Source: Convolutriloba macropyga
Taxonomy: Eukaryota
Direction: 5' to 3'
Length of the DNA stretch: 64,000 bases
Assembly (NCBI RefSeq): GCF_964194025.1
Contig: NC_134468.1
Location: 71,548,001 to 71,612,000 of the forward strand
Shown here piece by piece: positions 28,185 to 45,343 of this stretch (its first letter is position 1; each line of letters opens with the position of its first letter). Made by a program: the position numbers and the translations under genes. Below the pieces are notes generated by a model. That model did not search any database and was not told the origin of the DNA. It saw only the letters and a program-made list of their open reading frames with translations.

Positions 28185-29292
28185 AGTATCAAATTTGGCT
28201 GGGCTGCTACAGATCACACAATACGGGATCTCTTTATGTATGCCAGTCAAACTTGACAAAAGATATAACAAATCGAAGGCAAAGATATATGCCTAAGACC
28301 TGTCTGTGCTATAAGTCTCAATTTAAAATAGTTGGGGGGCTGAAAGTATTAAATTTATAAAAGAGTAAATATAAAATTACAGCTTACTAATTACCAGTTG
28401 TGTAGTGGTGAATTGGAGGTGAGCTGTTGGGCGATCGTTCACTTGGGTGTTTCTTCAGTTATGTTATTTGTCGAAAAAGAAAGTTATAAAATCAAATCTG
28501 GAATTATTTGTCTAAGTTATTAAACAATTTTGTTCGACTATTTTATTGTTAAAGTGAAGTTAAATTTTGAGAAAAAATGAAAGCAGTTGTCTGCTGCTTG
28601 TTTCTGGGTGTGATTTCTGTCTCTCTAATTTTATTCCGTCCCACTTCGCTGAGAGAAACAATTAATTCCTCTCAGCTCCGTTTGGGCCGATAGGGAGCGA
28701 ATCACAAACTCACGTTCATAGTGAGGTGCTTCTTAATTTTCCTATTGGCCGAGAAGGCAAGAGAATTAACTCTTTTTTATCTCACGGAAAAATTATTGAA
28801 ACTCCAAAAAATAATAAAAATCTAAAAAGCTGAGAGCATCAATTATTGATTTCGTAGGCGCCTGTTTTCTGCTTTTCCCCTCTTCTAAAACCGCAACAAT
28901 TATGGTTTTCTTGGGGGCTTTTTATGAGACTCTATTGTCTTTCCCCTGAAGCAATCTGCTTCATCTTTATTGAACTTGGGGGGAAAGATCTGCATTGCAA
29001 CTGTCAAAAGCAGAAGTAATTTAAATCAAAAGAAACTGTGGTTTTACAGGCCGCCTACGTTCAACAACGTACATTTTCTATCCTGGATATAAGCGAGGAG
29101 ATCCAGGCCTAAAGTTGTGTTATTTAAATAAGTCGAACTGAGTTGTTTAAATACTTGTGTACTGGTAGTCTTAATAAGCGTTAGTTTGTTTAGCGCGCGG
29201 CGAAAGAATGGTTAATTAGCGCCTAAATACGTTCGCTCTAATGCGGGATTAATTATCCGCTCATTTGTAACAGCTCTCGTAATACTACAGCT
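28185..29292 (-). repeat. 3' LTR of giant gypsy element (1108 bp)
   Basis: Matches 47088-48197 with about 5 differences seen by eye (3 substitutions, 2 one-base indels). Confidence 0.95.
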
Positions 29293-29479: not shown

Positions 29480-30655
29480 TTATTCAAAAAATTCTGGGGG
29501 CAAAATGACTGGGCTTGACATCGGACTGTTACCATCGTCTTCGATCAAAAGAACCTCTTGTATATCGTCCTCAGTTGGTTTGTCCTTATCCATTGATTGT
29601 CGCTTTTTGTGCTTTTTAGCTCTCCTTTTGAGCTCGGAAATTTTGTTTCTTTGTTCTTCGTTTTCCTTCATTAATTGTGTTATTTTCTTTCCTAGCTCCA
29701 GATTCTTTTCTCCAAGTTTTTTGTTGGCGTTTGTTATTTCCAGATGTTTCAAGGAGAACGTTTTTAGCATAGTTTGTGCATTCGATTCGCTGGTTTTTTG
29801 GAGTTGATGGGCAACGACATATTGGCGCCGCCAATAGTCGTTAAGTAGTTGCTTTTCCTCAGGTGGTTTCTGTGATTCCATTTTCAGTTGTTCAAATTTC
29901 AGTTGCAATTCTTGCAACTCTGTTTCCTTTTGAAACAGTTCCTGCCTGAATGTGGTGTTTTCCTCTATTAAACTACTAGTATTGATGTTTGATAGTTCTG
30001 GCATCTCAACAGGAAAAGCGGAAATTGCGTCGTAAGGGACTTCAATATATGCGTCGAGCATATTATTCCTAAGGGTATAAGTGCCCTTCATAGGGTCGCG
30101 ATTTTTAATTCTCCACTTGTTGTTTTCTGTGGGGAGCGAGAAGGTTTTCAGAACTGGAAGCTTTTCGCTGTTGACTAGTATCTGTTGATGTCCATTTGAC
30201 TGGATGATGTTTATTTTACTAGCAACCTCAAACTTGTTGTAGTTTGGTTTCAGGAAATAGAGGAGGGTATTAACGTACCTCGGGTTTTCTTTGTTCATAT
30301 TTTCCTCTCGCGGTTTCTGTAATTTCAAACATTCTGAGGGTATCTTCCTGATAGCGTCGGGAACGAGATCTTCAATGTTGTTCATCTTAATAATTTTGTT
30401 TTTGTGATTGCTAATTTGTTGGATTGGGAATTGTCTCTTTCTGCTAATTTGCCAGTTGTTTTCGGGATCATATTGACTGGAAGTTGATGGAGATGCAATA
30501 GTTGTAGTAACTTGTTGTGTGTTCTGAGGTTTAAATGGAGGCTTTGAGAAAATAGGAGGCTGGGAAGAATGGGTTTGTGTTTGTTCTTGTTGTGTTGTCA
30601 CTTGTTGATGTTGACTGGGGATTATTACGCTTGCGAGTGTGGGTCTGGTAGTCAT
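29480..30655 (-). CDS. Accessory ORF, 391 aa: Q/T/P-rich N-terminus, globular middle, coiled coil, basic NLS-like and SIM-like motifs
   Basis: ATG start. Heptad-rich ELFQKETELQELQLKFEQLK and KKLGEKNLELGKKITQL; KRRAKKHKKR; IQEVLLIEDD. AATAAA follows at about 29360. Confidence 0.8.
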   Translation of the reverse strand: MTTRPTLASVIIPSQHQQVTTQQEQTQTHSSQPPIFSKPPFKPQNTQQVTTTIASPSTSSQYDPENNWQISRKRQFPIQQISNHKNKIIKMNNIEDLVPDAIRKIPSECLKLQKPREENMNKENPRYVNTLLYFLKPNYNKFEVASKINIIQSNGHQQILVNSEKLPVLKTFSLPTENNKWRIKNRDPMKGTYTLRNNMLDAYIEVPYDAISAFPVEMPELSNINTSSLIEENTTFRQELFQKETELQELQLKFEQLKMESQKPPEEKQLLNDYWRRQYVVAHQLQKTSESNAQTMLKTFSLKHLEITNANKKLGEKNLELGKKITQLMKENEEQRNKISELKRRAKKHKKRQSMDKDKPTEDDIQEVLLIEDDGNSPMSSPVILPPEFFE

Positions 30656-31249: not shown

Positions 31250-31642
31250 TCAGACAACGTCGTCTAAAAAATTTTTGCAAATGGGACATTTTTTCTGCTT
31301 ATTTGTACATACTCGACAGAATCGATGTTCGTCATGTTGGGAAAAATGTGGGTGTTTTGTTACTCCTAATTCTGTTTTCATTTTTTTGCATAAATTGCAT
31401 CGGAAGTAGGATGTGATCAGGACGGGAAGACAAGGTCGAAGACAGATGGGACATTTAGGGTTTGGGTATCTCTTAAAAAGTGCTTTTCTGCAAGGAATAC
31501 ATACATAGTGGGGATTTTCTTTGGGGAATTGCTTGTGTAGTTTTTCTACAATAACGGTTTTCCGTGAACATATAGGGCAGATAATGTCCTTATGGGGATA
31601 GAACCAACGGAAACCGTCGAATAGGGATTGTGAAAGACCCAT
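31250..31642 (-). CDS. Double RING-like zinc finger protein 3 (130 aa), N-myristoylation motif MGLSQS
   Basis: C-x2-C-x10-H-x8-H-x2-C-x2-C-x12-C-x2-C, then x14 and a second CxxC-x23(H-rich)-CxxC-x6-CPxC. Confidence 0.85.
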   Translation of the reverse strand: MGLSQSLFDGFRWFYPHKDIICPICSRKTVIVEKLHKQFPKENPHYVCIPCRKALFKRYPNPKCPICLRPCLPVLITSYFRCNLCKKMKTELGVTKHPHFSQHDEHRFCRVCTNKQKKCPICKNFLDDVV

Positions 31643-32056: not shown

Positions 32057-32434
32057 TTATGTGGTTGTTTTTTCGCAACGAGGGCATAATTTATAATCTT
32101 CTACGCAAAATTTACAAAAGTTGACGGGCTTATGATCACTGTGATGAAACGTTTTTGCAACAGAGTATTGAAATCTTGTTTGTTTGCAAATATCACATTG
32201 AAACCAGTTAAAGATTGAAAAGATAACATTAAATTTAGAGCATTTAGGACAAAAATCGTAGCCCATATCTTTTATAACATATTGGTAACAGAGCAGACAC
32301 ATTACGTGGGGTAGTTCGTCAGGGGGGTTCTCGTGTAATTTCTTGAAGACAATTGTTTCACGTCTGCAGCATAAACAAATTAATGAGACCGGTTTGGATT
32401 CTATAGTATTGGTTTCTTTGTCAGTTGTATTCAT
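32057..32434 (-). CDS. Double RING-like zinc finger protein 2 (125 aa)
   Basis: Same Cys/His spacing and KLH..PH, F-x-C motifs as 31250 and 32703. Confidence 0.85.
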   Translation of the reverse strand: MNTTDKETNTIESKPVSLICLCCRRETIVFKKLHENPPDELPHVMCLLCYQYVIKDMGYDFCPKCSKFNVIFSIFNWFQCDICKQTRFQYSVAKTFHHSDHKPVNFCKFCVEDYKLCPRCEKTTT

Positions 32435-32664: not shown

Positions 32665-32702
32665 TTTGGATAATTTGTGAAGGTAGTTTTGAATCAAGGA
32701 TT

Positions 32703-33101
32703 TTACCACGGGTTGTTTGGGTCAATTGTTTGTTTGCATAAGGGGCATTTAGTAGTGGTGAAGGTCATACACTGCAAACAAATTGATTTTTCAGGGTGTA
32801 GGCTTTTGAAGTGGCTGTGGCAAGTGGATAACTTTTTGATTTCTTGACAAGAATCACACTGGAAATAATGGCAATGACTGATTGTATAAATGGGAGTTAC
32901 GCAAATGGGGCATTTAGGTTGGTTCCAATATTTAAATAATTCGTTTCTACAAGGAATGCAAGCAAAATGGGGGGGCTGACCATTTGGGTTTTTGTGCAAT
33001 TTTTTGAATTGACGGCAAGGGAGATAACAAACAGGGCATTCAACTTTAGGGGTTGTATCAATTTGAGGTTGCTGAGACGATATCTTCAGAATGTTTCCCA
33101 T
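32703..33101 (-). CDS. Double RING-like zinc finger protein 1 (132 aa), begins MG
   Basis: CPVC-x10-H-x8-H-x2-CIPC-x12-CPIC-x14-CDSC..CLQC-x7-CPLC; the ATG overlaps the upstream stop (TAATG). Confidence 0.85.
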   Translation of the reverse strand: MGNILKISSQQPQIDTTPKVECPVCYLPCRQFKKLHKNPNGQPPHFACIPCRNELFKYWNQPKCPICVTPIYTISHCHYFQCDSCQEIKKLSTCHSHFKSLHPEKSICLQCMTFTTTKCPLCKQTIDPNNPW

Positions 33102-33367
33102 TATAAGGAGAAATTAGAAAGATCCGGGTATACGAGTTCTAATCCATGGTGTTCAAGTTCGTTGGGGATAGTTACATTTAAATCTGCAATAGCAAAAAAG
33201 AAATTCCAGTGTTTTTCGTTTGGATAAATATAATAATGATTAATGGTACCTGTGCTTAAGAACATATAAGTTATTTTGATACATGCTTTATATTGTGTAA
33301 AACAGATATTGAACCATCTTTCTACTTTAAGAATTTTAATTTTTTCCTTACCAATAAACAAAATCAT
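33101..33367 (-). CDS. Small accessory protein family A, member 5 (88 aa)
   Basis: MILF..ERWF..CIKITY..PNEKHWNFF; aligns by eye with 33507, 33737, 33979 and 34502. Confidence 0.75.
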   Translation of the reverse strand: MILFIGKEKIKILKVERWFNICFTQYKACIKITYMFLSTGTINHYYIYPNEKHWNFFFAIADLNVTIPNELEHHGLELVYPDLSNFSL

Positions 33368-33506
33368 TTTAGTTTTAACAATTTGGAAAGAAATGAAGGG
33401 AAGAGAACAAATTGATCAGAAAAAAAAGGATAGAAAAAAATGAAGAAGAGGAAAGGAGAGAAAAAAAAAAATTTTGTGGAGAGCAAGTTATGTAAAACAA
33501 ATTACT

Positions 33507-33737
33507 TTACTGAAGAGCGCCCAAGTTGAATGGGAAGTGCTCTTCGATATCGATGAGTGCGAGAAAGAATTCCCAGTGCATCATTCCCATTGTTACTCGA
33601 GTAGAACCCTCACATCCACGCTCGTAGTCTGTATAGTGTATAATTATACAGGGTTTAATCTCTGCTGTGGAAGTTTCAATGAAAGATCTCTCGAGGGATT
33701 CTACTTTGACTAGGCGCTCACCAAAGTGGAACAGCAT
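33507..33737 (-). CDS. Small accessory protein family A, member 4 (76 aa)
   Basis: MLF..ERSF..PCIIIHY..HWEFF..PFNL; TAATG overlap with the upstream ORF. Confidence 0.75.
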   Translation of the reverse strand: MLFHFGERLVKVESLERSFIETSTAEIKPCIIIHYTDYERGCEGSTRVTMGMMHWEFFLALIDIEEHFPFNLGALQ

Positions 33738-33970
33738 TATAGAAGATCTAAATTAAAAGGGATTTTAGAACCATTTAAAGCTTGGGATATATTTATAAAG
33801 AATGTCCAATAGGGGGAAGATGGTGTTAAGGTAATGGTTCCATCAGTCCAAGTGTTTAAATATTCAAAATGGAGTATTAATTGTGGGATTACTCTGTTGC
33901 TTTTTGTCGTGACAAATGATTTTTCAAAAAATTGTATTTGTATAAGGCAGTTTTGGTATGAGAATATCAT
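33737..33970 (-). CDS. Small accessory protein family A, member 3 (77 aa)
   Basis: MIF..EKSF..PQLILHF..LTPSSPYWTFF..PFNL. Confidence 0.75.
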   Translation of the reverse strand: MIFSYQNCLIQIQFFEKSFVTTKSNRVIPQLILHFEYLNTWTDGTITLTPSSPYWTFFINISQALNGSKIPFNLDLL

Positions 33971-33978
33971 TGCTGCTT

Positions 33979-34263
33979 TTAATTGTTAATAGTTTCCAAT
34001 TCTTTAGTAATGAAATCGTTTTGAGAACAATCACTTTTCGGCAATTCAAAATAAAGATTGTGAGGTACACAGTTTGGGTTTTCTAGAATAAAGAGGAAGA
34101 ATTTCCAATGAACTGAAAGAGGATTAATACTTATTAAACAAATTTTTTCACTTTGGATTTCTTTGAGCGTTACTAGCATAGTAGGTACAGGAGTTGGGTA
34201 TGCATCAAAAGATCGTTGAATTTTTTGTAACTCTACAAATTTATTGTTAACTGCAAATATCAT
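33979..34263 (-). CDS. Small accessory protein family A, member 2 (94 aa)
   Basis: MIF..QRSF..PTMLVTL..PLSVHWKFF..PHNL. Confidence 0.75.
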   Translation of the reverse strand: MIFAVNNKFVELQKIQRSFDAYPTPVPTMLVTLKEIQSEKICLISINPLSVHWKFFLFILENPNCVPHNLYFELPKSDCSQNDFITKELETINN

Positions 34264-34278
34264 AGTTTAGAATGATAC

Positions 34279-34518
34279 CTAAGCAATGTAGATTGGATGT
34301 TGTACTTGAAATACCGAGTTCTCTTTGAATGCTAGAAAAATGGTGAATTCGGCAAACTGAGGATGAGTAATGAAAATAGTTAAAAGTCTGTAAATATTTG
34401 TCATGGGTTTTTTTGCGAAAGTCATTATACTTATAGCGGAAACATAGTATACGGCTAATAGCTCAAAATTTTGGTTTCCGATTCTGATTTGTAAGTTTCT
34501 ATTAGTTAAATGAATCAT
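34279..34518 (-). CDS. Small accessory protein, family B-like (79 aa)
   Basis: C-terminal THPQFAEFTIFLAFKENSVFQV resembles PNF..LL..L...NSVIE of 44838 and 45344. Confidence 0.6.
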   Translation of the reverse strand: MIHLTNRNLQIRIGNQNFELLAVYYVSAISIMTFAKKPMTNIYRLLTIFITHPQFAEFTIFLAFKENSVFQVQHPIYIA

Positions 34519-34744
34519 GTTGCTGATCTAGCTCGTTTGGCAAACTATTAGGGTCGAATTGTGCTAAATACACGAAATAATTCCAATACAACGAATGAGG
34601 GGTTAAAATCACAGTATCGTATTCCCAAGTGTCCCAAAACTCAAAATTTATAATGATTTGAGGGAAAATGTCTCCGTGATTTTCTTCAAAAGTTTTCTTT
34701 ATTTGATAAATTGTAACGAGTCTATCTTGAAACAAAAAGTACAT
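34502..34744 (-). CDS. Small accessory protein family A, member 1 (80 aa)
   Basis: MYF..KKTF..PQIIINF..LTPHSLYWNYF..PNEL; closest by eye to 33737. Confidence 0.75.
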   Translation of the reverse strand: MYFLFQDRLVTIYQIKKTFEENHGDIFPQIIINFEFWDTWEYDTVILTPHSLYWNYFVYLAQFDPNSLPNELDQQHDSFN

Positions 34745-35046: not shown

Positions 35047-35331
35047 TCAAAGTCTAATAATATTTTTCTTCAGATGCTTTGAAACAATTTTGTATTCGAC
35101 TCCAATGTTTACAAAAGTAATTGTGTCATCAATCAGGGCTCTTAACAATGAGAAGTATTGAAAATTTGAATGCGGTACGTCCAAGTCTATAATGTCACTG
35201 AAGTAGAAAGATGCAACTCTAATAGTTACAGTAGTTTTTAAATCGGAAAGACTTGAGGATAATATCTGTCCGGTGTATTGTCCAAATCGAATGAATAAAG
35301 CGTTAGGCTGTTTTATGAATTTGGGTTGCAT
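35047..35331 (-). CDS. Small accessory protein (94 aa), unknown function
   Basis: ATG start, co-oriented, first ORF after env; weak resemblance (IRFG, HSNFQYF) to 34279. Confidence 0.6.
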   Translation of the reverse strand: MQPKFIKQPNALFIRFGQYTGQILSSSLSDLKTTVTIRVASFYFSDIIDLDVPHSNFQYFSLLRALIDDTITFVNIGVEYKIVSKHLKKNIIRL

Positions 35332-35458: not shown

Positions 35459-37807
35459 TTAAGGAGGTGCCACCACACTTCGAATGGTTGCATCATTTTG
35501 TGGTTGTGGTTGATGTGACGCCAGATTTGGGTATTCTCCTTTATTATTTTCTGTATGACAATGCTCATCAATTTTATTTTCTCTTGGTTGATCCTCAACG
35601 CATTTGTAAGTTTTTTCTATTGTGCTGTAAGGTTGATAATTACTAAGCGGTAAAAAATGATTGTTGTTCTGCGGGGCCGACGGTTTGGTTTCGTTAGAGA
35701 ATACCGGTGTAAAGAACGATAAGATACAGAGATTATATGTTGCTCCTAATAGAATTTTCCAAAAACCCATTGTTTTGTTGGATATTTTGTGGATTTCGAA
35801 CGCTCTTATGATTGTTACGATTACATCAGTTAAGAATTTTGTGCACAAGAAACAAGCAAAATAAACTCCAATTTTTTCCAGATAAAAAGTGATGATTCCA
35901 AAAGTGCCTTTGAACTGGTCTGTAAAAAATGTAGGTGAAAGAAGAGAATCTAGATAAATTTGTCTGTTAATTCCCATTGCTGACGCATAGATATCTTTTT
36001 GAGAATAGTCTATGCTTCTTCCTTCTAGAACTTCTCTTGAAATTTTTGTCAAAACAGATTTTGAAGCTTCCGAATGCAAGATATTGTCCCAAAAAGATTT
36101 AAGTTGATTTGGTGTGTAAATTCCGGCACGTTGCGATTCGTAACCGGTAAATTTTGGAATAGAACTAATAACTCTTGAAGAGAATATTTTTGGCGGTTGT
36201 AAAGGAACAGGTGCTGGCATCAAATGGTACCATGAATTTTCATTATCAATATCTAATTGGTAGGCATTTTTGTAGCCTCCAACACAATCTACTTCGTTTG
36301 CAAAAGGGTAGGTTTGTCGAGTAATTGGGTCGACGAACATTGTCCTACCATCATAATGAATAGGAATCCTATCATAACACTGTTCAAGAACCTGAAGTGG
36401 TGAGTTTCGTTTTGGACAGTGGTACAGCCAACCTATGCTACCATCTGTGTCTAAGAACATCGAGCGGTTGCCGGTTAACATATATCCAGCTAAACGATTG
36501 TTTTGGATAGCCTGCATTAGTATCATTTGTTTTTGAGTTCGGTCAAGTTCGCATTGTTCTATGACCAAACCTTTCCATGCTTGTTTTATTTGCATGTAAT
36601 TATGATATATGACAAAATCCATTTTTACCGCAAGGTTAAGATCATAGTCTAACTTGTCTTTGTCTAAGTGTTCCCATGCAACAAAACCATTGTCGGATGT
36701 TCGGATCTGTTCATCTGAAGGCTTCCTATTAAACCCATTTACACTTAGGCTATTGTCAGGTTCAACACGAAGTTTATGAAAAAATTGTTGAGTTTTTGTT
36801 TTATAAGGTTTGCCAGTCTTCATATTAAATCCGCCTTTATAAGAAACATATAAAGAATCTAAATTTGTTCTGTAAATAAATTCTGGTTTTCCACACACCT
36901 TTCCTTTTTCATCAATTACTCTAATTTTTATGTCCATTTCAGCAGGAGAATACGTTCCTGGTCCTTCATAGGGCGTCTCCGGTTTTTCATCACTCACTAT
37001 GAAATACTGTACGTTACCAAGTTCGTTTTCATGTTTTAGCATTTTTGCGTTTTGTGAAAATCTTTTAGTAACTATACAATTTTCCGGTGCCTCCCAATTG
37101 TATGCAAAGGGGTCGAGTGATGTCGAATGACAACCTCCTTCTGAGAGGGCATAAGGAAGTTTTAGTCCTTGACTGTTATAGACAGTTCTGTCATTAAGAT
37201 CAATATCGAGTACAGTTTCTTGCATCAAGGTTTCAAAAGAGAAGTGTTTAATTTGACCACGATTATCACAAGATGTTGATGATTCACCTTCAAGATCAAC
37301 TCCCTGGTTTTTATAGGAGACAGTTTTTATTCCATGTTTTATGTCTATTTCCTTGTCATCATCGTCAAATTCGGTAACAGTAATTTTTCCAGTTTTATTA
37401 GCATTTAGGCATTGTTCGGGTGAAACAATAATATCGTATGTTATTATTGGAGCGTTGTGTACAATTGATGAATGGGAAAACATACCACAATTATAACGAA
37501 TGAGCATTGCAGTGACTTTGCACATAAGAGCTTTAACAAAGGTCCGATAAGACCGTTGATAAAGTGTTACATGTGTATCAACCATTTGAATGTTTTCGGG
37601 TGTAATTTTGCAAGGAGAAACTTGTGTTAAAGCATACATTTTATTTTCTTTCATTTTAGAACAGTCATAATGAATGACCCTAAGTTTGTTAGATACGTCA
37701 TTAATATCCTCAGTAGCGTTAATAACTATAGAAAGAGTACAAAAGTAGAAAAGACTTATAAGTAAATAAGAAAAATAGAGTTTTTCAAAACAAGGATATC
37801 TTTTCAT
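35459..37807 (-). CDS. env: Envelope glycoprotein, chuvirus-G/herpes-gB-like (class III fusogen-like), 782 aa from first ATG
   Basis: Signal-like FSYLLISLFYFCTLSIVINA; Cys-rich ectodomain with HYDCS, CELDR, WLYHC..CYDRIPIHYDGRTMFVDPITR..VDC and GIYT; C-terminal hydrophobic segments; located after pol. The frame is open from 37867. Confidence 0.8.
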   Translation of the reverse strand: MKRYPCFEKLYFSYLLISLFYFCTLSIVINATEDINDVSNKLRVIHYDCSKMKENKMYALTQVSPCKITPENIQMVDTHVTLYQRSYRTFVKALMCKVTAMLIRYNCGMFSHSSIVHNAPIITYDIIVSPEQCLNANKTGKITVTEFDDDDKEIDIKHGIKTVSYKNQGVDLEGESSTSCDNRGQIKHFSFETLMQETVLDIDLNDRTVYNSQGLKLPYALSEGGCHSTSLDPFAYNWEAPENCIVTKRFSQNAKMLKHENELGNVQYFIVSDEKPETPYEGPGTYSPAEMDIKIRVIDEKGKVCGKPEFIYRTNLDSLYVSYKGGFNMKTGKPYKTKTQQFFHKLRVEPDNSLSVNGFNRKPSDEQIRTSDNGFVAWEHLDKDKLDYDLNLAVKMDFVIYHNYMQIKQAWKGLVIEQCELDRTQKQMILMQAIQNNRLAGYMLTGNRSMFLDTDGSIGWLYHCPKRNSPLQVLEQCYDRIPIHYDGRTMFVDPITRQTYPFANEVDCVGGYKNAYQLDIDNENSWYHLMPAPVPLQPPKIFSSRVISSIPKFTGYESQRAGIYTPNQLKSFWDNILHSEASKSVLTKISREVLEGRSIDYSQKDIYASAMGINRQIYLDSLLSPTFFTDQFKGTFGIITFYLEKIGVYFACFLCTKFLTDVIVTIIRAFEIHKISNKTMGFWKILLGATYNLCILSFFTPVFSNETKPSAPQNNNHFLPLSNYQPYSTIEKTYKCVEDQPRENKIDEHCHTENNKGEYPNLASHQPQPQNDATIRSVVAPP

Positions 37808-37910
37808 CCTGTTCTTTTTTAGCGCTTCAAGTCGGGAATTAAGGCTATAAGTTGTAGTAATAGGCACTGCCAGTAAATGTTGACTGGATTTATTGCTACC
37901 TAAAACAAAG

Positions 37911-40900
37911 TTAAGTAAATCCGGCTTGATAGCGTGATGGCGGCTTGGCCGAGCGACTAGAAGTTCGCCTATTATTATTATTATTTTCTAAAGTTTGTAA
38001 ATTAGAAGGTCCTTGTTCCGATGTATTAGGGCGGAGAGGACTTAAATTAGGGTCTAGAGGTATTCTAGAATTGTGCTGTGGGCAAGGAGTTGAACTTCTT
38101 GTTCGACTACCGCTAGGTAAGTGTGTTTGGACTGGAGGTGGGTCATTACGACCACCTGAACTTGCTTCGTTGAATCCAGAATCGAAATTGGTAGGTGTTC
38201 GGTCAGGGTCGAAGTTCTGCACAGGGGAGTCTCTTCGTATGAAATTATCCACGGGGAAATATTCGGTGTTAGTGGGGCTTTGGAAGGAGAATTTAGTCAA
38301 AGGACTATTGAGTTTATTCATCTGACTTGTCATTAGATTATTATAAAATGTGTCACAATTATTTTTATCTATACCATACTCTAGAGTTAACTCTGGTATA
38401 GTTTCAGTAGCTGGGTAGTACTCGACTAGGTGATTTCTATGAGCGACCTTCCTGGTGGCCGGGTTGCTATCTAAAGTTAATTCATAGTTAACATTGGTTA
38501 GTTTTTTTTCTACAGTATAAGGACCTGATCTTAGTTCGTGTAGTTTTTTTGACTTTCCTAACTCAATTTGATGGTTTTCCATTAGAACTTTTTGTCCAAC
38601 CTCAAGTGGCTTGCCTAATTTGTGTTTGTTTCTATGTTTATGTGCGCGGTTATTGTTTTCTAAGCTCTTTTTATAAGCGTTATTGTATATTTGTTTGAAT
38701 TGGTTTTCTCGCATAAGCAACGAATTGTTAATAGTCGGTTTTAGAAGTTTGTCAATTTCGGTGTTTTTTGAAGTTTGCAAGGTATGCCTGTGAAGAGGCA
38801 GGTCTTTGCAAAACTCGGAAGAGCATGTGAGTTGTGAATTTCGTAGGAGTCCTAACTTAAGTGACAGAGGTATCTGTGGTTTTTGTCCGAACACAATTTC
38901 ATAAGGTGAGATTCCAGTACTAGCATTTGGAACCGTGTTATGAGAAAAAGCAAATTTTGGTGCCAGTTCGTCCCATTTACCTCGAGCTTGTTCTAGAAAA
39001 ATTCGGAAATGTGCTCCTAGATGTTTGTTTTGGATCTCGACTTTACCATTAGTCCAAGGCGCATAAGCAGTTCGAGGTGCGGGTGTTATACCTAATTCAT
39101 GAATGTAACTCGCAAAATCTTGGTTCATGAATGCCGAACCCTTATCATAAACAAGTTTTTGTGGTATTCCAAAAGACAAGATGAACTTTTCTAAAGCTTT
39201 TATGGTGTCTACTGCGTCTGTGGAACGTACAGGGTATACTTGAATGAAACGCGAAAATGAATCGACAATAACTAAACAATGGTGTTTACCGTTTGATGGA
39301 GGATTTAAAGGTCCTTTGTGATCAATGTGGACCGTATGAAAGGGGAATGGGACTGTATCAGTCCACTTTTCGAGAGGTGCTTCGTGGATGTCTCTCCGTT
39401 TTCGTTTATTTTTTTGGCATTCAAGGCAATCAGCAATTAGGTTTTCAATCCATTTATACATTCCGGGCCAATAAAAAAATCGTTTTACATTAGCAAGTGT
39501 TTTATCTAAACCGACATGACCTGACAGTTCACAATGAGCTAGCTGAAAAACTTTAAAGAACAATGACAGTGGTACACAAATTTTTAAGAATTCAATATCT
39601 GGTTCGTCTGTTTGATGTTGAATACATAAGATGTTGCCTACAAAACTCAGTTTTTCAAAGTTATTAATGTATGACATTATGGCTTTAGATTGTCGGAATT
39701 CAATTTTCTTTTCATCTTTGTTATTGTTCGTCCTTAATTGGCGAATTTGTTGTATCACTGGGTCTTTTAATTGTTCTTGACAAATTACCGATGTATTTAA
39801 ATCAACTTCTTTAGAGAAGATTGTCAGTTTATCGATGAGTTCTCTTGCATCTTGTATTTTTGTATTTTCGGGAAATTTTTTTGCTAATTCGGTTTTGTCT
39901 ATACAAGTGCTATTTTTCACGAGAAAAACTTTATCGTATTCTAGAGGGAATCTGTACTCCGAGTCTGTGGTATTAGTTTGATCAATGTAGAGTTTGTCAA
40001 AATCTAATTCCGGTGACTGGTTCTCATTGAACAATTCAAATTCCGAAATTGGGTCAAAATTTTGTTCGGTTATCCCTTCATCAGGGTAGGAATCAATTTC
40101 TGTATAATGATCAGACGTTTCGCCTTCCTCCTGTTCTGATACAGGGGTTATTTCATGTTTGCGGTGACGCCTATAGTGGTTAATTGATGAACCATACGAG
40201 AAATCTTCCGAAATATTGTTTATTGAGCAAAGTCTGTTTTGATTATTGTCGTACTTTTGCTTTACCATTTTGTCATTTTTGAAAATGAATTTGTCGATAC
40301 CCGTTATGCTTTGTTTTAGGATTGGAAAAAAGTCATCTGCTGGTCCCTTTTCATTATCACGCAAAATGAAGTATTTTTCCTCGTTACCATGCTCGTCGTA
40401 AAAACTAATGTCTTTTGGTATCTTTTTGTGTTTAAGTTGATACTTGTCCAGATCTTTAATTTTTACATTGCGACTTAGGATGTCGGGAAAAGCTAAGTTT
40501 TTTCCTTCAGTCCAAATAATTTTCAAGTTCTGAAATTGAGATATTACTAACTGGTATCTAAAAAACCTGTGAGAGAGTTTTCCTCTTCTACCCCATAGAT
40601 ACATTAAAGGTTTATGGTCTGTGTACACGTATACAGGATGGGGAGAACCAATTAGGTAATGCTCATGAGTTTGTAATGCCGATATTACACCGCAAAGTTC
40701 GCGTGCTGTGGTACTCATTTTTTGTTCCTCTTTAGTGTAAATTCTAGAGTTAAAAGACACTATTCGTTTCCCTTCTGGAAATTCTTGAACGAGAATTGAG
40801 CCTACTCCTATAGAAGAAGCGTCTACATGCACGTGGAAAGGGTATTTAGTATCCGGTATTGCTAAGATAGTATCTTCGCTAATTCTGTTTTTAATGTCGT

Positions 40901-43007
40901 TAAACAGTTTTTCGTGTTCCATTGTCCAAACAAATTTAGTTTCTGTGCGGGTTAAGTCATAGAATGGTTTGCAGTCAACATGCAAATTTTTGATGTACAT
41001 GCTGTAGAATCCTAAGCAGCCTAGAACTTTCATGACATCACGTTTGTTTTCAGGCGACTTAAGTGCTTTTAAATCTGCTACTCGCTTCTTGACTGGTTGT
41101 ATTCCATCTTTACCTACTACATGTCCCAAGAACTGTACTTTCCTAAGGAAAAATTTAGTCTTTTCAGGTTGAGCTTTCAATCCTGATTTCCTTAAAAGTT
41201 CATGGTACTTGTCAATTATTTCAAACATTTCGGTTTCATCTTGCGCTTGCATGATGGTGTCATCAATGTAGGTTATAGCTTGTTTTTTTCTAATTAATGG
41301 TGCAAAATGGATAGTCATTATACGACTAAAGAAATTAGGTAGACCGCATAGGCCGTAAAATCCGCGTTCAAATGTGTATTGCTTTGGACCAATTACAAAA
41401 CTTACCAGCTGTTTGGTTTCCTCAGTTAGAGGGACTTGGTTATAGGCTGAACAAAGATCACTGGTTGTGAAGAAATTACCTTTTAATCTAGTTAATAGAC
41501 TTCCGATTGGTTCGAGTGGCCATGAATATCGACTAAGGTCTGTTATTGAATTCAGATATCGGGCATCTATAACCAGTTTTACTGTGTTCCCCTTGGGTAG
41601 GATTATGATTGGATTAATAAATTCTGATCCCATTTCTTTATCATTACCCATTTCCCGGATTATACCTGTTTTACACAGTTGTTCCAATAGGTTTTCTAGT
41701 TTTTCCTGATAATGTAATGGTACTTTGGATGGTCTTTGTTTTGTCAAAGTTGAATTAGGTAAAAGTTTAACATGAAACTTTTGTTTTATCTTTCCAACAT
41801 CGTATTTGTGTTGAGAGTAAACGTCTTTATTTTTAGTTAAAGTCCTCAGTAACTTGTCTAAGTTTTCGTCATTGATATCAGCTTGACTGAAATCAAATTT
41901 TTTGAGAAACGCTTGATCGGTTTTGTCAAACCTGTTAAGTTTTTCTTTGGGAAGTTCAACGGGTCTGATGTTCTCATCAGTTGTTTCTAATTGTGGCTTA
42001 AGATCCTTGAGGTCGTCGCTAAAGTCTGTTTCTAATTCGTAGTTGTTGGTAAAATCTTGTTGCCTTTTTCGCTTTTCTGTTTTCTTTTGTTTTTCAGGAG
42101 TTTTGCTTGCAAAGAAATTTTGAATTTTTGAAATTTTTGGACCTTGTTTTTCACTAACATGGAATATTTGATCCCAATTAGTGTCACTATTCATTAGGTG
42201 GTTTATGAATGCAACGTTGTCAACTACAGAAAATTCTGGGTCTTGTCTAATTTCAATGTCTTCTAAAGTGTGTCCAATAGGACCCTTTTGGATGACAACC
42301 TTGTTGTTTTGAGGATTGTTTAGCATTATTGGTAATTCCTTTTCTTTTCTAAAACACTGAACGTTGTAAGTATAAATTCCTTGAGCTTGCAGTTCACTTC
42401 CAATTACGAAGGAGGTTCCCTTTCTGAAGAATTCATTTGGTGGTCTAATTGATATTACTCGAGTTGATTTTGGTGCTAATGGTAGTTGCTGGTCAAGAGT
42501 TACAACTTTGTAAGAGCTAATGTATGGATAGCTTTTCGTTTGGTATCTAGATAGTGTGACGGCTACTTCAGGGTAAGTTTTTAAATCAATTTTTGGAGTG
42601 GTTAGGTCAATAGATTTTACTGTAGATTCAAGGAAATCCATTCCCAACAGATTTGGCTTGCAACCATCTTTTGCTGAAACCCATGTGGTAACTTCCACTT
42701 GATACTTTCCTTCAATGTCGAAAGAAGTTTTGAAAGTAATTTGACCTAGAAGTTTTAGTTTCTCACCATTAACCGCTAAAGTATGATTTTTTGAAGCTTT
42801 CATCTCAATGTGTTGTAATTTACATAGTTCAAGATAAGTGTGGTAATTAATTATAGAGCTTGATGCTCCTGTGTCCAATAAAAACTGTGTTTCTAAGCCG
42901 TTATTTTTATTTTTGTCTCCGACGGATTGGTATAAATTAATATAGATATGTGAGTAACTTGCTTTGTTATCATTAGTGTTTATGAACGGAGACCTGTCTA
43001 GTTTAAA
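37911..43007 (-). CDS. pol: Pol (protease, dUTPase-like relic, RT, RNase H, integrase), expressed by -1 frameshift from gag
   Basis: FLLDTGAS; YIDD (41259-41270); VDAS..ELCG..TDHKPL..DILSR; H-x5-H..CxxC; IDHKGP..YDKG..KVE; GPY motif. The frame is open from the slippery site at 43007 to the stop at 37911. Confidence 0.95.
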   Translation of the reverse strand, partial: FKLDRSPFINTNDNKASYSHIYINLYQSVGDKNKNNGLETQFLLDTGASSSIINYHTYLELCKLQHIEMKASKNHTLAVNGEKLKLLGQITFKTSFDIEGKYQVEVTTWVSAKDGCKPNLLGMDFLESTVKSIDLTTPKIDLKTYPEVAVTLSRYQTKSYPYISSYKVVTLDQQLPLAPKSTRVISIRPPNEFFRKGTSFVIGSELQAQGIYTYNVQCFRKEKELPIMLNNPQNNKVVIQKGPIGHTLEDIEIRQDPEFSVVDNVAFINHLMNSDTNWDQIFHVSEKQGPKISKIQNFFASKTPEKQKKTEKRKRQQDFTNNYELETDFSDDLKDLKPQLETTDENIRPVELPKEKLNRFDKTDQAFLKKFDFSQADINDENLDKLLRTLTKNKDVYSQHKYDVGKIKQKFHVKLLPNSTLTKQRPSKVPLHYQEKLENLLEQLCKTGIIREMGNDKEMGSEFINPIIILPKGNTVKLVIDARYLNSITDLSRYSWPLEPIGSLLTRLKGNFFTTSDLCSAYNQVPLTEETKQLVSFVIGPKQYTFERGFYGLCGLPNFFSRIMTIHFAPLIRKKQAITYIDDTIMQAQDETEMFEIIDKYHELLRKSGLKAQPEKTKFFLRKVQFLGHVVGKDGIQPVKKRVADLKALKSPENKRDVMKVLGCLGFYSMYIKNLHVDCKPFYDLTRTETKFVWTMEHEKLFNDIKNRISEDTILAIPDTKYPFHVHVDASSIGVGSILVQEFPEGKRIVSFNSRIYTKEEQKMSTTARELCGVISALQTHEHYLIGSPHPVYVYTDHKPLMYLWGRRGKLSHRFFRYQLVISQFQNLKIIWTEGKNLAFPDILSRNVKIKDLDKYQLKHKKIPKDISFYDEHGNEEKYFILRDNEKGPADDFFPILKQSITGIDKFIFKNDKMVKQKYDNNQNRLCSINNISEDFSYGSSINHYRRHRKHEITPVSEQEEGETSDHYTEIDSYPDEGITEQNFDPISEFELFNENQSPELDFDKLYIDQTNTTDSEYRFPLEYDKVFLVKNSTCIDKTELAKKFPENTKIQDARELIDKLTIFSKEVDLNTSVICQEQLKDPVIQQIRQLRTNNNKDEKKIEFRQSKAIMSYINNFEKLSFVGNILCIQHQTDEPDIEFLKICVPLSLFFKVFQLAHCELSGHVGLDKTLANVKRFFYWPGMYKWIENLIADCLECQKNKRKRRDIHEAPLEKWTDTVPFPFHTVHIDHKGPLNPPSNGKHHCLVIVDSFSRFIQVYPVRSTDAVDTIKALEKFILSFGIPQKLVYDKGSAFMNQDFASYIHELGITPAPRTAYAPWTNGKVEIQNKHLGAHFRIFLEQARGKWDELAPKFAFSHNTVPNASTGISPYEIVFGQKPQIPLSLKLGLLRNSQLTCSSEFCKDLPLHRHTLQTSKNTEIDKLLKPTINNSLLMRENQFKQIYNNAYKKSLENNNRAHKHRNKHKLGKPLEVGQKVLMENHQIELGKSKKLHELRSGPYTVEKKLTNVNYELTLDSNPATRKVAHRNHLVEYYPATETIPELTLEYGIDKNNCDTFYNNLMTSQMNKLNSPLTKFSFQSPTNTEYFPVDNFIRRDSPVQNFDPDRTPTNFDSGFNEASSGGRNDPPPVQTHLPSGSRTRSSTPCPQHNSRIPLDPNLSPLRPNTSEQGPSNLQTLENNNNNRRTSSRSAKPPSRYQAGFT
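42915..43007 (-). promoter_or_regulatory. -1 ribosomal frameshift signal: U UUA AAC plus downstream stem
   Basis: T TTA AAC (43007-43001) directly before the gag TAG. After a 7-nt spacer, GTCTCCG (42993-42987) is complementary to CGGAGAC (42921-42915). The -1 frame is the pol frame. Confidence 0.8.
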
Positions 43008-44332
43008 TACTCGTCGTTGTGATTCTCATTATTGTAATAGTTTCTGGAAGTTTCACTGGTAAAGTGAACTCGAGGGCTTCGCCCTTCACTGTTATCTCTT
43101 GAATGAGTATTATTGTTTTGTCTAGTAGGTGTCCTATCCCGGTCATGGTCTCTACTCCTATCACGATATCGATTATCTGATCTTGGAGGACCGTTGCTTT
43201 GTCTATCCCTACTATTTTGCCTATTGTTATCTCTGTAAAAGTTGTTTCGATAGTTATTTTGTCGTTCCTGTGATCGGTTATCGTAAGAAGATGATCGATA
43301 ATTGTTTGAAGAGTTTGATGGGTACGGTGATCGATGTCGGTAGTCTGATCTAGAGTTGTTTTGATAATTGGATTGATTTTGGTTATAACTATTTCTCTGT
43401 CTGTCCCTAGAATTTCGATTGTCATAATTGTTTGATTTGTAATTTTGTTGACCTGGTGAATGGCACCTACTACGTTTATAATTATCTGTGAACTTTTCTC
43501 GTTGTTGAGGTGGGTTTCGGTTTTCGTTTTTAAAGTCCTTGTACTTAAAGCAGAAAGCTATTGTGTGACCTGAACGTTTGCAAAACTTGCAGAATCTAGT
43601 CTGGTTTTGTTTGAATCTGGGGTTGTCGTTGTTGTATGTGGCGTTTATTTTATGATCTTTCATTAAATTTGCAATTTCTGTGAGTTGGTTTTTTAACCCT
43701 TCTATTTCTATTTTATTGTCGATACTACTTGAGGCAGTACCCGTGAATTCACTGCTAACAGAAAAACTTAAGTCTTTAGTTGCTACATGATCCTGTAATT
43801 GTTGCCAAGTTGTAGCTGGGTTTTCTATTAACCGCTGATGTGCCTTTTGCTTGAGTGTAGGTGGCGTTAATCCTCTTACAAAGTACTCCATACACTTAGC
43901 GTTACGCTGGTCGTTGTTAAAATCTGGATCTGGCCATCCTTTTTCAACTGCTTTTGTTACTCGGTGTGTATAGCTTTTTATCAATTCATCTGGTTGCCTT
44001 TTAATACTCTCGACTTCAATTCTTTTCCTATACTTGTCTTTTGCATCAGTAAAGCGGGTAATGAACTGATTTCTAACTTCGTTCCATGCTAAACCTGGTG
44101 CTAAGGTTTCAAACCATTGGGCTGCGGGCCCACGCAAAACCGAACCAAACAATGCTTTTTGTCTAGCGTCGTATGCTGCTTGTAAATCAGCATCCGCAGG
44201 ATCTCTTGTTCCTAGTGAGAATTGGATTTTTCTTTGTATTAAACTAAAGAATTCCTGGGCATCTTCAGATGGATCTAAACCTGTAAATTTCTCTAACGCT
44301 ATGTCGGGGTACGCAACAACGTTCGCTGCCAT
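42998..44332 (-). CDS. gag: Gag (444 aa) with CCHC knuckle and long R/S/N/D-rich tail
   Basis: AAACATGG start context; capsid-like LRGPAAQWF..WNEVRNQFITRF..QPDELIKSYTHR; CKFCKRSGHTIAFC (CX2CX4HX4C). Confidence 0.92.
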   Translation of the reverse strand: MAANVVAYPDIALEKFTGLDPSEDAQEFFSLIQRKIQFSLGTRDPADADLQAAYDARQKALFGSVLRGPAAQWFETLAPGLAWNEVRNQFITRFTDAKDKYRKRIEVESIKRQPDELIKSYTHRVTKAVEKGWPDPDFNNDQRNAKCMEYFVRGLTPPTLKQKAHQRLIENPATTWQQLQDHVATKDLSFSVSSEFTGTASSSIDNKIEIEGLKNQLTEIANLMKDHKINATYNNDNPRFKQNQTRFCKFCKRSGHTIAFCFKYKDFKNENRNPPQQREKFTDNYKRSRCHSPGQQNYKSNNYDNRNSRDRQRNSYNQNQSNYQNNSRSDYRHRSPYPSNSSNNYRSSSYDNRSQERQNNYRNNFYRDNNRQNSRDRQSNGPPRSDNRYRDRSRDHDRDRTPTRQNNNTHSRDNSEGRSPRVHFTSETSRNYYNNENHNDEYLN

Positions 44333-44837: not shown

Positions 44838-45074
44838 TTAGGCTAATTCTATTACACTGTTTCGATTTCTTAGAGCAACCAAAAGTTCATTAAAGTTTGG
44901 GTTAGTCCACTTATAAGTAATGTAGATTTCGGTCTGTGTTTCGTTAGGACAATGATGGTAAATGCATAAGAAGTTTCTGTTCTGATCAGTTAAATAATAT
45001 GAAACTTTGCCTATTTTGTTCTGTACTTTAATACTTATGTTTAAATTCTGAACATTTACTTTAATATATGACAT
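44838..45074 (-). CDS. Small accessory protein family B (78 aa from first ATG), upstream of gag
   Basis: IYITYKWTNPNFNELLVALRNRNSVIEL matches the ORF at 45344. Confidence 0.7.
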   Translation of the reverse strand: MSYIKVNVQNLNISIKVQNKIGKVSYYLTDQNRNFLCIYHHCPNETQTEIYITYKWTNPNFNELLVALRNRNSVIELA

Positions 45075-45343
45075 ATAAATAACATAGAACAATTGTTTTT
45101 TTTCTGTTTTATTATTGTATTTTTGTATGAAATTACACAGAGGACAGTATAAAAACGTTTAATACGGGTTGTTTAGTACATCAGTAGTAGTATTTTAGTA
45201 GTTATTATTATGTAGAAATGTGTATGTATAATGTTTCTAAAGTGATTGAGTCTGTTAATGACCGTATTTTAGCATGAAACAACAACTTTTCTATGATAAA
45301 TTTGTGTACAAAGCGGGTTAAAAAGGCTAATTTACGCTTTAAA

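What the first reader, a model, noticed from the sequence alone, without database searches (positions are those of the whole stretch)
33101..34744. Five-member novel small-protein family (family A) amplified in tandem
Seen: ORFs 34502, 33979, 33737, 33507 and 33101 (76-94 aa) share M-x-F, (E/Q/K)-(R/K)-(S/T/W)-F, P-x-hydrophobic strand, (H/Y)W-x-(F/Y)F and a late P-x-(N/E)-L, despite low overall identity. I recognise no known domain. Inference: old, selected duplicates of one small beta-rich fold; such gene accordions are typical of virus-host arms races.
Basis: seen in the sequence. Interest (0 to 1): 0.75.

Follow-up and report, generated by a model that had tools for sequence, protein, structure and literature searches.

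The report
Small accessory-gene family in endogenous retrovirus
The five small ORFs are a real, selectively maintained family of about 80-residue proteins with no known relatives, and they are accessory genes of a 20-kb retrovirus-like (Ty3/gypsy) element in a marine animal genome, an old fixed array, not a recently expanding one.

Summary
The five ORFs (33101-34744, minus strand) are homologous: pairwise z = 4-21, 0 of 500 shuffles as good, and leave-one-out profile E = 1e-8 to 1e-16. They lie inside a 20,011-bp LTR element (28187-48197, minus strand; LTRs 99.6% identical) with the order gag, pol, env, Y, A1, X, A2, A3, A4, A5, three RING-like genes, ORF391.

Family A has no Pfam, PHROGs or PDB-sequence match. 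AlphaFold2 gives a confident model (pLDDT 92) of four strands then a helix, and Foldseek finds no significant match.

Relatives occur only in marine metagenome assemblies (Tara Oceans and long-read assemblies). They always sit downstream of a homologous env and directly upstream of the RING-like genes. A tree shows positional orthologues (A1-A4) across elements whose env is only 54-62% identical, so the duplications are old and the order is fixed. There is no DNA-level repeat. Selection is purifying: for A3-A5 against a sibling copy there are 36 synonymous and 13 non-synonymous changes (pN/pS 0.09, p = 2e-15).

"Old, selected duplicates of a beta-rich fold" is supported. "Gene accordion" is not.

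The most likely role, which is inferred, is that of cytosolic protein-binding accessory factors working with the linked RING-like proteins against host factors. This is a new variant of a known kind. The host species was not identified.

The parts
34502..34744 (-). A1, family A member (80 aa, pI 4.2)
   Evidence: Groups with L007_a and L008_a in the tree.
33979..34263 (-). A2, family A member (94 aa, with a C-terminal extension)
   Evidence: Groups with L007_b, L008_b and L003_a.
33737..33970 (-). A3, family A member (77 aa). This is the protein that was modelled.
   Evidence: AF2 model with pLDDT 92.3 and pTM 0.78: strands 2-5, 8-21, 27-37 and 43-48, then helix 55-65. omega 0.02 against L013.
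33507..33737 (-). A4, family A member (76 aa). Its ATG overlaps the A3 stop codon (TAATG).
   Evidence: omega 0.06 against L013.
33101..33367 (-). A5, family A member (88 aa), a lineage-specific fifth copy. Its stop codon overlaps the ATG of RING-like B1 (TAATG).
   Evidence: omega 0.18 against L013.
34279..34518 (-). X, a conserved 79-aa ORF interleaved between A1 and A2. It has the same order of predicted secondary-structure elements as A, but homology is not shown.
   Evidence: Conserved in L001, L008 and L009 and in 16 database proteins. AF2 model with pLDDT 80.7: four strands, a helix, then two short strands. hhalign against A is not significant.
35047..35331 (-). Y, a conserved 94-aa ORF directly after env
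   Evidence: Conserved in L001, L007, L008 and L009. hhalign against A is not significant. hhalign against family U gives E = 0.011 over 60 columns.
35459..37867 (-). env, a viral fusion glycoprotein
   Evidence: Pfam PF24664 Monjiviricetes_fusion, E = 1.4e-38. 77 homologues found.
37911..42878 (-). pol (protease, RT, RNase H, integrase), Ty3/gypsy type
   Evidence: Pfam RVT_1, RT_RNaseH, Integrase_H2C2 and rve
42998..44332 (-). gag
   Evidence: Pfam Retrotrans_gag
32703..33101 (-). B1, a RING-like double zinc-finger protein that directly follows the A array
   Evidence: Weak zf-C3HC4_3 match, below the Pfam cut-off. Paralogue of B2 and B3 and found next to A in every A-bearing locus.
32057..32434 (-). 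B2, RING-like paralogue
31250..31642 (-). B3, RING-like paralogue
29480..30655 (-). ORF391, the last accessory gene (coiled-coil-looking C-terminal half, judged by eye), variable between copies
   Evidence: Homologues in L001 (52% aa), L007, L010 and L005. The nucleotide alignment to L001 breaks at window 29539-30532.
47091..48197 (-). 5' LTR of the element
   Evidence: 1107 bp, 99.6% identical to the other LTR
28187..29292 (-). 3' LTR of the element
44838..45092 (-). U1, a member of a second small-ORF family that lies upstream of gag
45344..45601 (-). U2, the second member of that family

Best explanation
Shown: family A is a set of five anciently duplicated accessory genes that are kept by purifying selection. 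They belong to a recently active, 20-kb, env-carrying Ty3/gypsy (errantivirus-like) endogenous retrovirus of a marine metazoan. Each gene encodes a separate protein of about 77-94 residues, acidic to neutral, with no signal peptide or membrane segment evident. The one modelled member (A3) has four beta strands followed by one helix and a short conserved C-terminal tail of the form hydrophobic-P-x-N/D/E-L-D/E. The genes are packed end to end, with overlaps or gaps of -17 to +15 nt and two TAATG stop/start overlaps. Wherever they occur they are immediately followed by RING-like zinc-finger genes. Inferred: the genes are read from a polycistronic subgenomic RNA, most simply by termination-reinitiation. 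The proteins act by protein-protein binding. The shared core (the E-R/K-S-F motif, the W-x-F-F helix and the tail motif) contacts a common partner, most plausibly the element's own RING-like proteins, while the variable strand 3-4 region gives each paralogue its own host target. The host targets would be restriction, silencing or innate-signalling factors. In logic this resembles lentiviral Vpr/Vpx/Vif, which hand host factors to an E3 ubiquitin ligase.
For: The element has two 1107-bp LTRs 99.6% identical to each other, plus gag, pol and env domains. The homology of the five members is significant. There are 43 representative relatives among 1.84 billion proteins. Every one of the 13 loci fetched comes from a marine metagenome or other public assembly, and every locus that includes upstream sequence has the A genes downstream of a homologous env. 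Positional orthology A1/a, A2/b, A3/c and A4/d holds across elements whose env is 54-62% identical. The A-bearing elements form one env clade with support 90/93. A and the RING-like B family are present together in 5 of 5 loci of that clade and absent together in 3 of 3 related elements outside it. Purifying selection: against sibling copy L013, A3+A4+A5 show 36 synonymous and 13 non-synonymous differences, pN/pS 0.09, p = 1.6e-15. Between lineages dS is saturated while the ORFs stay intact. The A3 model is confident. pI values are 4.2-6.9. Gene junctions were read directly. A related element carries a TRAF/MATH gene in the same position. Giant planarian gypsy elements are reported to carry RING, MATH/TRAF, BIR and BCL2-like modules (PMC6431247).
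Against: No expression data of any kind were available. No binding partner, ubiquitin-ligase activity or host target was tested. The RING assignment for B rests on Cys/His spacing and on Pfam hits below the curated cut-off. The co-occurrence of A and B is explained by a single gain, so it is only one evolutionary event. Copy numbers of A and B do not track each other: 5:3, 4:2 and 2:3. A1+A2 have pN/pS 0.54, which is not distinguishable from neutral at this shallow divergence. ATG triplets are not depleted in the array, so leaky scanning is not supported. Reinitiation is assumed, not shown.
Confidence: 0.45

Rival explanations
1. The A paralogues (possibly with X, Y and the U proteins) are subunits of one hetero-oligomeric assembly, for example a particle-associated or scaffold complex. 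Each distinct subunit is needed, as with the paralogous COMMD ring or PUR repeats that pair to form one domain.
For: Each orthogroup is retained in a fixed order across diverged lineages. The proteins are rather hydrophobic for 77-residue soluble proteins, with GRAVY up to +0.5. The nearest, non-significant, structural analogues include obligate-oligomer modules: the COMM domain and the Pur-alpha repeat.
Against: Member number varies between lineages: 5, 4, at least 2, and 2. The Foldseek matches are not significant, with E >= 0.08. No multimer modelling was possible.
Confidence: 0.2
2. The A proteins bind nucleic acid (a PUR/Whirly-like or KOW/SH3-like beta module) and help export, translate or package the long polycistronic RNA.
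For: The order of elements, four strands then a helix, equals that of a PUR repeat. The best PDB alignments are to EF-P/eIF5A domain I, with TM 0.43-0.54 and RMSD 2.7-3.5 A over about 50 residues.
Against: Most members are acidic or neutral, pI 4.2-6.9 and net charge down to -9. No structural match is significant.
Confidence: 0.1
3. The A genes are passenger (cargo) genes captured from the host and play no part in the element's own life cycle.
For: Related elements carry clearly host-derived cargo, a TRAF/MATH gene, in the same place.
Against: Every one of the 43 representative hits is a small protein or a fusion of two family members, and every locus inspected that includes upstream sequence places the A genes after a homologous env. 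Purifying selection acts within element lineages. The host genome itself could not be searched as such.
Confidence: 0.1
4. The ORFs are chance reading frames in non-coding spacer DNA of the element.
For: No expression evidence is available.
Against: Homology is significant. The ORFs stay intact and are protein-conserved while synonymous sites are saturated. pN/pS is 0.09. The structure model is confident.
Confidence: 0.02

Closest known systems
Env-carrying Ty3/gypsy 'errantiviruses' of non-insect metazoans (Chary & Hayashi 2026, PMC13524379)
   Same: LTRs, the gag-pol-env order, a viral fusion glycoprotein as env, multiple near-identical genomic copies, and presence in marine invertebrate phyla.
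   Different: A term search of that paper finds no 'accessory' and nothing relevant under 'additional ORF'. This element has at least 14 further ORFs in paralogous families and is 20 kb long.
Giant gypsy-like retrotransposons with accessory modules (planarian Burro/GYPSM1; Arkhipova & Yushenova 2019, PMC6431247)
   Same: A very large Ty3/gypsy element with a mononegavirus-like fusion glycoprotein and accessory RING and MATH/TRAF-type modules pointing to ubiquitination or innate signalling.
   Different: In Burro the modules lie within a giant polyprotein and env lies between gag and pol. Here there are separate small cistrons after env, and family A has no counterpart there.
Accessory proteins of complex retroviruses, especially the Vpr/Vpx paralogue pair of primate lentiviruses (own knowledge)
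   Same: Small (about 80-110 aa), non-enzymatic, cytosolic proteins encoded near env. A duplicated pair has diverged to different host targets, and they act through an E3 ubiquitin ligase.
   Different: There is no sequence or fold similarity: Vpr/Vpx are three-helix bundles, while A is four strands plus a helix. Here there are five to seven paralogues, the element seems to bring its own RING-like proteins, and the function is untested.
Tightly packed polycistronic genomes of Caulimoviridae and the UAAUG/AUGA termination-reinitiation sites of influenza B M1/BM2 and caliciviruses (own knowledge)
   Same: Consecutive ORFs with overlapping stop and start codons (TAATG, ATGA) in a reverse-transcribing or RNA virus (L008 coordinates).
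   Different: No transactivator and no 18S-complementary motif was sought or found. The mode of expression here is unknown.
Gene accordions and multigene families of large DNA viruses, such as poxvirus K3L amplification and ASFV MGF (own knowledge)
   Same: Tandem paralogous genes in a virus-like genome.
   Different: Accordions are recent, nearly identical, copy-number-variable amplifications. Here the copies are 22-35% identical, their order is fixed, and there is no DNA repeat.

Membership tests
Ty3/gypsy (Metaviridae) env-carrying LTR retroelement (the context of the finding) | Two long terminal direct repeats flanking the coding region | tested here: met
   28187-29292 and 47091-48197, 1107 bp each, 99.6% identical
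Ty3/gypsy (Metaviridae) env-carrying LTR retroelement (the context of the finding) | gag plus pol with the domain order protease, RT, RNase H, integrase | tested here: met
   Pfam hits in that order along the 1655-aa ORF, and Retrotrans_gag in the upstream ORF
Ty3/gypsy (Metaviridae) env-carrying LTR retroelement (the context of the finding) | A third ORF encoding a viral fusion glycoprotein | tested here: met
   PF24664, E = 1.4e-38
Ty3/gypsy (Metaviridae) env-carrying LTR retroelement (the context of the finding) | Primer-binding site, polypurine tract, TG..CA termini and a target-site duplication | tested here: inconclusive
   A TGG-initiated PBS-like sequence lies 2 nt after the 5' LTR, and a purine-rich stretch lies before the 3' LTR. 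No clear target-site duplication or canonical termini were seen.
Retroviral / retroelement accessory genes (a functional class) | Encoded between the LTRs, outside gag-pol-env, and conserved among related elements | tested here: met
Retroviral / retroelement accessory genes (a functional class) | Expressed from the provirus and acting on host or viral processes | not testable with these tools
   No transcriptome or proteome data were available.
Gene accordion (recent adaptive tandem amplification) | Near-identical tandem copies, with copy number varying among close relatives | tested here: not met
   22-35% amino-acid identity and no DNA repeat. The same five copies are present in sibling copies L001 and L013. 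Positional orthologues hold across lineages.
PUR repeat / Whirly-like fold | Significant structural similarity to a PUR repeat | tested here: not met
   5fgo_A gives E = 0.42, TM 0.30/0.35 and RMSD 8.4 A. Only the order of strands and helix agrees.
PUR repeat / Whirly-like fold | A basic nucleic-acid-binding surface | tested here: not met
   pI 4.2-6.9 for the window members
COMM domain | Sequence or significant structural match to the COMM domain | tested here: not met
   No Pfam hit. Foldseek gives E = 0.27-0.65 and TM about 0.4.
KOW / translation-protein SH3-like domain (EF-P / eIF5A domain I) | Significant structural match | tested here: inconclusive
   This is the best PDB match: 5wxk_B, E = 0.08, TM 0.47/0.54, RMSD 2.7 A over 51 columns that cover only the strands. 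There is no sequence signal.
RING-type E3 ligase (the neighbouring B genes) | A cross-brace C3HC4-type Cys/His pattern recognised by a curated model | tested here: inconclusive
   zf-C3HC4_3 and zf-RING_5 score 18-20 bits, below the cut-off of 27-28. Conserved C-x2-C pairs are seen in the alignment. There is no PDB sequence hit.

The most novel reading that the evidence does not exclude
Family A may be only the recognisable core of a larger superfamily. Families U (two genes upstream of gag), Y, X and A1-A5 would then all be diverged copies of one module of four strands plus a helix. A single retroelement would encode nine or more paralogues, which assemble into a hetero-oligomer that works with the element's RING-like proteins. 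Such a multi-subunit, virus-encoded machine built by serial duplication has no precedent in reverse-transcribing elements. The hints are these. X has the same predicted order of elements as A. U against Y gives hhalign E = 0.011 over 60 columns, and U against X gives E = 0.005 over the N-terminus. The best sub-threshold hits of the U profile are mostly Y, A5, X and A4-type ORFs. None of these is significant on its own.
Probability: 0.15. Interest if true: 0.75.

Novelty: new variant of a known kind. Interest (0 to 1): 0.55.

Why it matters
Reverse-transcribing elements are usually thought to be limited to gag, pol, env and at most a few accessory genes. Tandem duplicates are also expected to be lost through template switching. 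This element keeps five (perhaps more) ancient paralogues of an unannotated small protein, three RING-like paralogues and further small-ORF families, in a polycistronic layout more like a compact virus or an operon than a eukaryotic gene region. It has more than 100 near-identical copies in at least one marine animal genome, and relatives are present in several ocean metagenome assemblies. It offers a tractable new protein fold family, and a natural system for asking how invertebrate retroviruses deal with host defences and how many cistrons are translated from one eukaryotic RNA.

Tried and rejected
1. Tests of whether X and Y belong to family A gave nothing: pairwise z < 1, no hit from the five-member profile, and hhalign probability below 1%. 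An AF2 model of X has the same order of elements. The two models could not be superposed, and Foldseek hits for X differ (kinase N-lobes, not significant). Membership is left open.

2. I tried to use the natural A3-A4 fusion protein P0099 as a stand-in for a heterodimer model. MAFFT placed every single-domain sequence on the second half, so the attempt was dropped.

3. A family alignment could not seed a search of viral contigs. A single-protein scan of IMG/VR found nothing.

4. Host identification failed. There are no tRNA or Rfam hits in the window. No paper mentions the assembly or sample accessions. The loci carry no organism labels. The only evidence is a BEL/Pao element in the window, a group I know only from metazoans, and Tara Oceans marine metagenomes as a source of relatives.

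5. Leaky scanning as the mode of translation is not supported, because ATG triplets are not depleted.

6. The pyrimidine-rich tract before A5 was read as a possible splice acceptor, but no AG lies between the tract and the ATG.

7. dN/dS between element lineages could not be used because dS is saturated. It was replaced by a comparison with sibling copy L013.

8. PDB sequence searches for B1 and ORFYes391 found nothing.
Full report
**1. The observation**

ORFs of 80, 94, 77, 76 and 88 residues lie on the minus strand at 34502-34744, 33979-34263, 33737-33970, 33507-33737 and 33101-33367. I call them A1 to A5.
The M-x-F motif is M-I-L in A5.
- For all ten pairs, none of 500 shuffles reached the real Smith-Waterman score (z = 4.1-21.2).
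- A profile built from any four members finds the fifth at E = 1e-8 to 1e-16 among 821 six-frame ORFs of the window. The best background hit is E = 0.03.
- The family is therefore real. There is no nucleotide-level repeat in 33000-34800, so the similarity survives only at the protein level.
- The array is interrupted once, by a 79-aa ORF (X, 34279-34518) that shows no significant similarity to A.

**2. The setting**

The ORFs are not host genes. Direct repeats of 1107 bp, 99.6% identical, lie at 28187-29292 and 47091-48197. They bound a 20,011-bp element on the minus strand.

Read 5' to 3', the element contains:
- a 104-bp tandem repeat block;
- two small ORFs, U2 and U1;
- a 126-aa ORF;
- gag (Retrotrans_gag);
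- pol (protease, RT, RNase H, integrase);
- an 802-aa env that matches Pfam Monjiviricetes_fusion at E = 1.4e-38;
- Y, A1, X, A2, A3, A4 and A5;
- three paralogous RING-like zinc-finger ORFs, B1-B3;
- a 391-aa ORF, then the 3' LTR.

This is an env-carrying Ty3/gypsy element of the errantivirus-like kind recently catalogued across metazoan phyla (PMC13524379). Its size and accessory content recall the giant gypsy elements of planarians, which carry RING, MATH/TRAF, BIR and BCL2-like modules (PMC6431247).

A second LTR element in the window (about 55059-62737, plus strand) is BEL/Pao. As far as I know that group is confined to metazoans, so the host is an animal. I could not name the species.

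**3. Distribution**

- A profile search of 5.8 billion clustered proteins gave 98 hits, all unnamed and all from ENA assemblies. Several clusters hold 114-147 member sequences, so the element has a high copy number.
- An exhaustive HMMER search of 1.84 billion representatives found only 43 proteins at E < 1e-3. All are small proteins or read-through fusions of two family members.
- The contigs that carry them come from Tara Oceans marine metagenomes (L003, L004, L008, L009) and from long-read metagenome assemblies (L001, L005, L007, L011, L013).
- In every locus that includes upstream sequence, the A genes follow a homologous env. In every A-bearing locus that reaches far enough downstream, a RING-like B gene follows them directly.
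- The counts of A genes are five (window, L001, L013), four (L007, L008/L009), two (L011) and at least two (L003).

**4. Age of the duplications**

A maximum-likelihood tree of 31 members groups them by position rather than by element:
- A1 groups with the first gene of L007 and L008.
- A2 groups with their second gene and with L003_a (support 95/86 for the inner set of six; L008_b joins at 90/83).
- A3 groups with their third gene.
- A4 and the fourth genes of L007 and L008 fall in one weakly supported group (86/85), which also holds the A5 clade.
- A5 forms its own clade (99/98) with L005_a and P0068.

The env proteins of these elements are only 54-62% identical to the window's. In an env tree the A-bearing elements form one clade (90/93). 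The related elements L010, L006 and L012 lie outside it and lack both A and B.

So a four-gene array arose once, before these lineages split, and has kept its order since. A5 is a later addition. This is the opposite of a gene accordion.

**5. Selection**

- Between lineages synonymous sites are saturated (dS > 1.5 or undefined), yet the ORFs stay intact. dN is 0.35-0.80 for A orthologues and 0.27-0.33 for env, so family A evolves faster than env.
- A sibling copy, L013, is 96.3% identical overall but mosaic. dS is about 0.03-0.04 in env, Y, X and A2, but 0.34, 0.36 and 0.21 in A3, A4 and A5. This suggests recombination between sublineages.
- Over that deeper stretch, A3+A4+A5 show 36 synonymous and 13 non-synonymous differences (pN/pS 0.09; binomial p = 1.6e-15). 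This is direct evidence of purifying selection.
- A1+A2 show pN/pS 0.54 from 20 differences, which cannot be told apart from neutral change.
- Positive selection was not demonstrated.

**6. The protein**

- None of the 37 aligned members matches Pfam. There is no meaningful PHROGs match either; the best is one member at E = 0.031. The family profile finds nothing significant among PDB sequences (best E = 0.9).
- AlphaFold2 with a 37-sequence alignment models A3 at mean pLDDT 92.3 and pTM 0.78. It has strands at 2-5, 8-21, 27-37 and 43-48, a helix at 55-65, and a less confident tail that carries the conserved P-x-N-L-D motif.
- Foldseek finds no significant match in the PDB. The best is EF-P domain I (E = 0.08, TM 0.47/0.54 over 51 columns). 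COMM domains and a Pur-alpha repeat appear at E = 0.3-0.6.
- Foldseek also finds nothing significant in BFVD (best E = 0.02).
- The window members have pI 4.2-6.9, and I saw no signal peptide or membrane segment in the sequences. The nearly invariant initiator Met followed at once by strand 1 argues that each ORF is translated on its own.

**7. Gene packing**

The junctions are as follows:

| Junction | Spacing |
|---|---|
| A1 / X | 17-nt overlap |
| X - A2 | 15-nt gap |
| A2 - A3 | 8-nt gap |
| A3 / A4 | TAATG overlap |
| A4 - A5 | 139-nt pyrimidine-rich gap |
| A5 / B1 | TAATG overlap |

- L008 is equally tight, with overlaps of 1 and 4 nt and gaps of 2 nt (coordinates).
- ATG triplets are not depleted (16 observed, 18.4 expected), so leaky scanning through the array is unlikely.
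- I infer translation by termination-reinitiation from one or a few subgenomic RNAs. This is known from caulimoviruses, influenza B and caliciviruses (own knowledge). Nothing here tests it.

**8. Mechanism**

What is shown:
- a conserved, selected, cytosolic-looking small fold;
- strict linkage to RING-like genes;
- the position of an accessory gene in a retrovirus-like element;
- a TRAF/MATH gene at the same position in a related element.

What I infer is that the A proteins are protein-binding accessory factors. Their conserved core and tail would contact a common partner, most plausibly the B proteins. Their variable strand 3-4 region would address different host proteins. In logic this resembles Vpr/Vpx/Vif with their E3 ligases.

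I put about 0.45 on this complete statement. That combines roughly 0.9 that family A is a selected accessory gene family of the element with roughly 0.3-0.4 for the adaptor mechanism.

The rivals are a hetero-oligomeric structural complex (0.2), nucleic-acid binding (0.1), passive host-derived cargo (0.1) and non-coding sequence (0.02).

**9. Novelty**

Accessory ORFs in LTR retroelements are known (PMC5408684, PMC6431247), and so are env-carrying gypsy elements in marine phyla (PMC13524379). What is new is:
- this protein family, which is unannotated and has no detectable relatives;
- its organisation as an ancient, order-conserved paralogue array in a compact polycistronic block next to paralogous RING-like genes.

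I rate it a new variant of a known kind, with interest 0.55.

**10. Limits**

- The host was not identified.
- There are no expression data.
- Only two structure jobs were available, so Y and U were not modelled.
- The models could not be superposed.
- The N run at 25064-25271 was left untouched.

Noticed in passing
window 44838-45092 (-) and 45344-45601 (-); L008 504-731, 742-981 and 1030-1266; L007 8547-8834: There is a second family of small (75-85 aa) paralogous ORFs, which I call U. It lies upstream of gag and is conserved across element lineages (profile E = 1e-25 to 1e-40). It shows weak profile-profile similarity to Y (E = 0.011 over 60 columns) and to the N-terminus of X (E = 0.005). 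The best sub-threshold hits of its profile are mostly Y, A5 and X.
   Followed up: partly
window 32703-33101, 32057-32434 and 31250-31642 (-): Three paralogous proteins of 125-132 aa each carry two RING-like Cys/His clusters (Pfam RING hits are below the cut-off). They directly follow the A array in every A-bearing locus and are absent wherever A is absent. B3 begins MGLSQS, a possible N-myristoylation site.
   Followed up: partly
window 32461-32709, 31913-32050 and 31667-31789 (-): Short, very hydrophobic ORFs that look like membrane peptides lie in the gaps after B1 and B2. L007 has a comparable hydrophobic 105-aa ORF at 12685-13002.
   Followed up: no
window 29480-30655 (-), especially 29539-30532: ORF391 has a C-terminal half that looks coiled-coil by eye and a PRYVN-x-L-x-Y motif. 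It is only 52% identical in copy L001, although the rest of that copy is 97.5% identical in DNA. It is therefore a hypervariable or recombinant accessory gene. Homologues in L006 occur as two paralogues.
   Followed up: partly
window 33101-33970 compared with L013 6776-7647: Divergence between sibling copies is mosaic. dS is 0.21-0.36 in A3-A5 (and 0.13-0.21 in B1 and B3) but about 0.03-0.04 in env, Y, X and A2. This indicates recombination between sublineages inside the accessory region.
   Followed up: partly
L012 12815-14137: A related element (env 36% identical) carries a 440-aa TRAF/MATH-domain gene after env in place of the A and B families.
   Followed up: partly
L011 12471-12710 and 12789-13064: Another element of the A-bearing clade has its own pair of small paralogous ORFs (79 and 91 aa) directly after env. 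They are unrelated in sequence to A, X or Y.
   Followed up: no
window 46036-46855: About 6.6 copies of a 104-bp tandem repeat lie between the 5' LTR and the first ORFs of the element.
   Followed up: no
window 33368-33506 and about 34800-34870 (-): Long pyrimidine-rich tracts precede A5 and A1. The one before A5 has no AG before the ATG, so it is not an obvious splice acceptor. Its role is unknown.
   Followed up: partly
window 55059-62737 (+): A second LTR retroelement of BEL/Pao type (DUF1759, Peptidase_A17, rve, DUF5641), with direct repeats 96-99% identical about 7.3 kb apart and a frameshifted pol.
   Followed up: partly
window 4985-6766 (-), 24844-25578 (-) and 998-1600 (-): These look like host secreted low-complexity proteins. 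One has long DDDN repeats followed by YGSSYPYSS repeats. It ends in a Cys motif (CCDGKC) shared with the ORF at 24844-25578, which is interrupted by the N run. A glycine-rich ORF lies at 998-1600.
   Followed up: no
window 8663-9042, 13321-13760 and 63137-63549: Three copies of an interspersed repeat, 61-76% identical, that looks like a short non-autonomous element.
   Followed up: no
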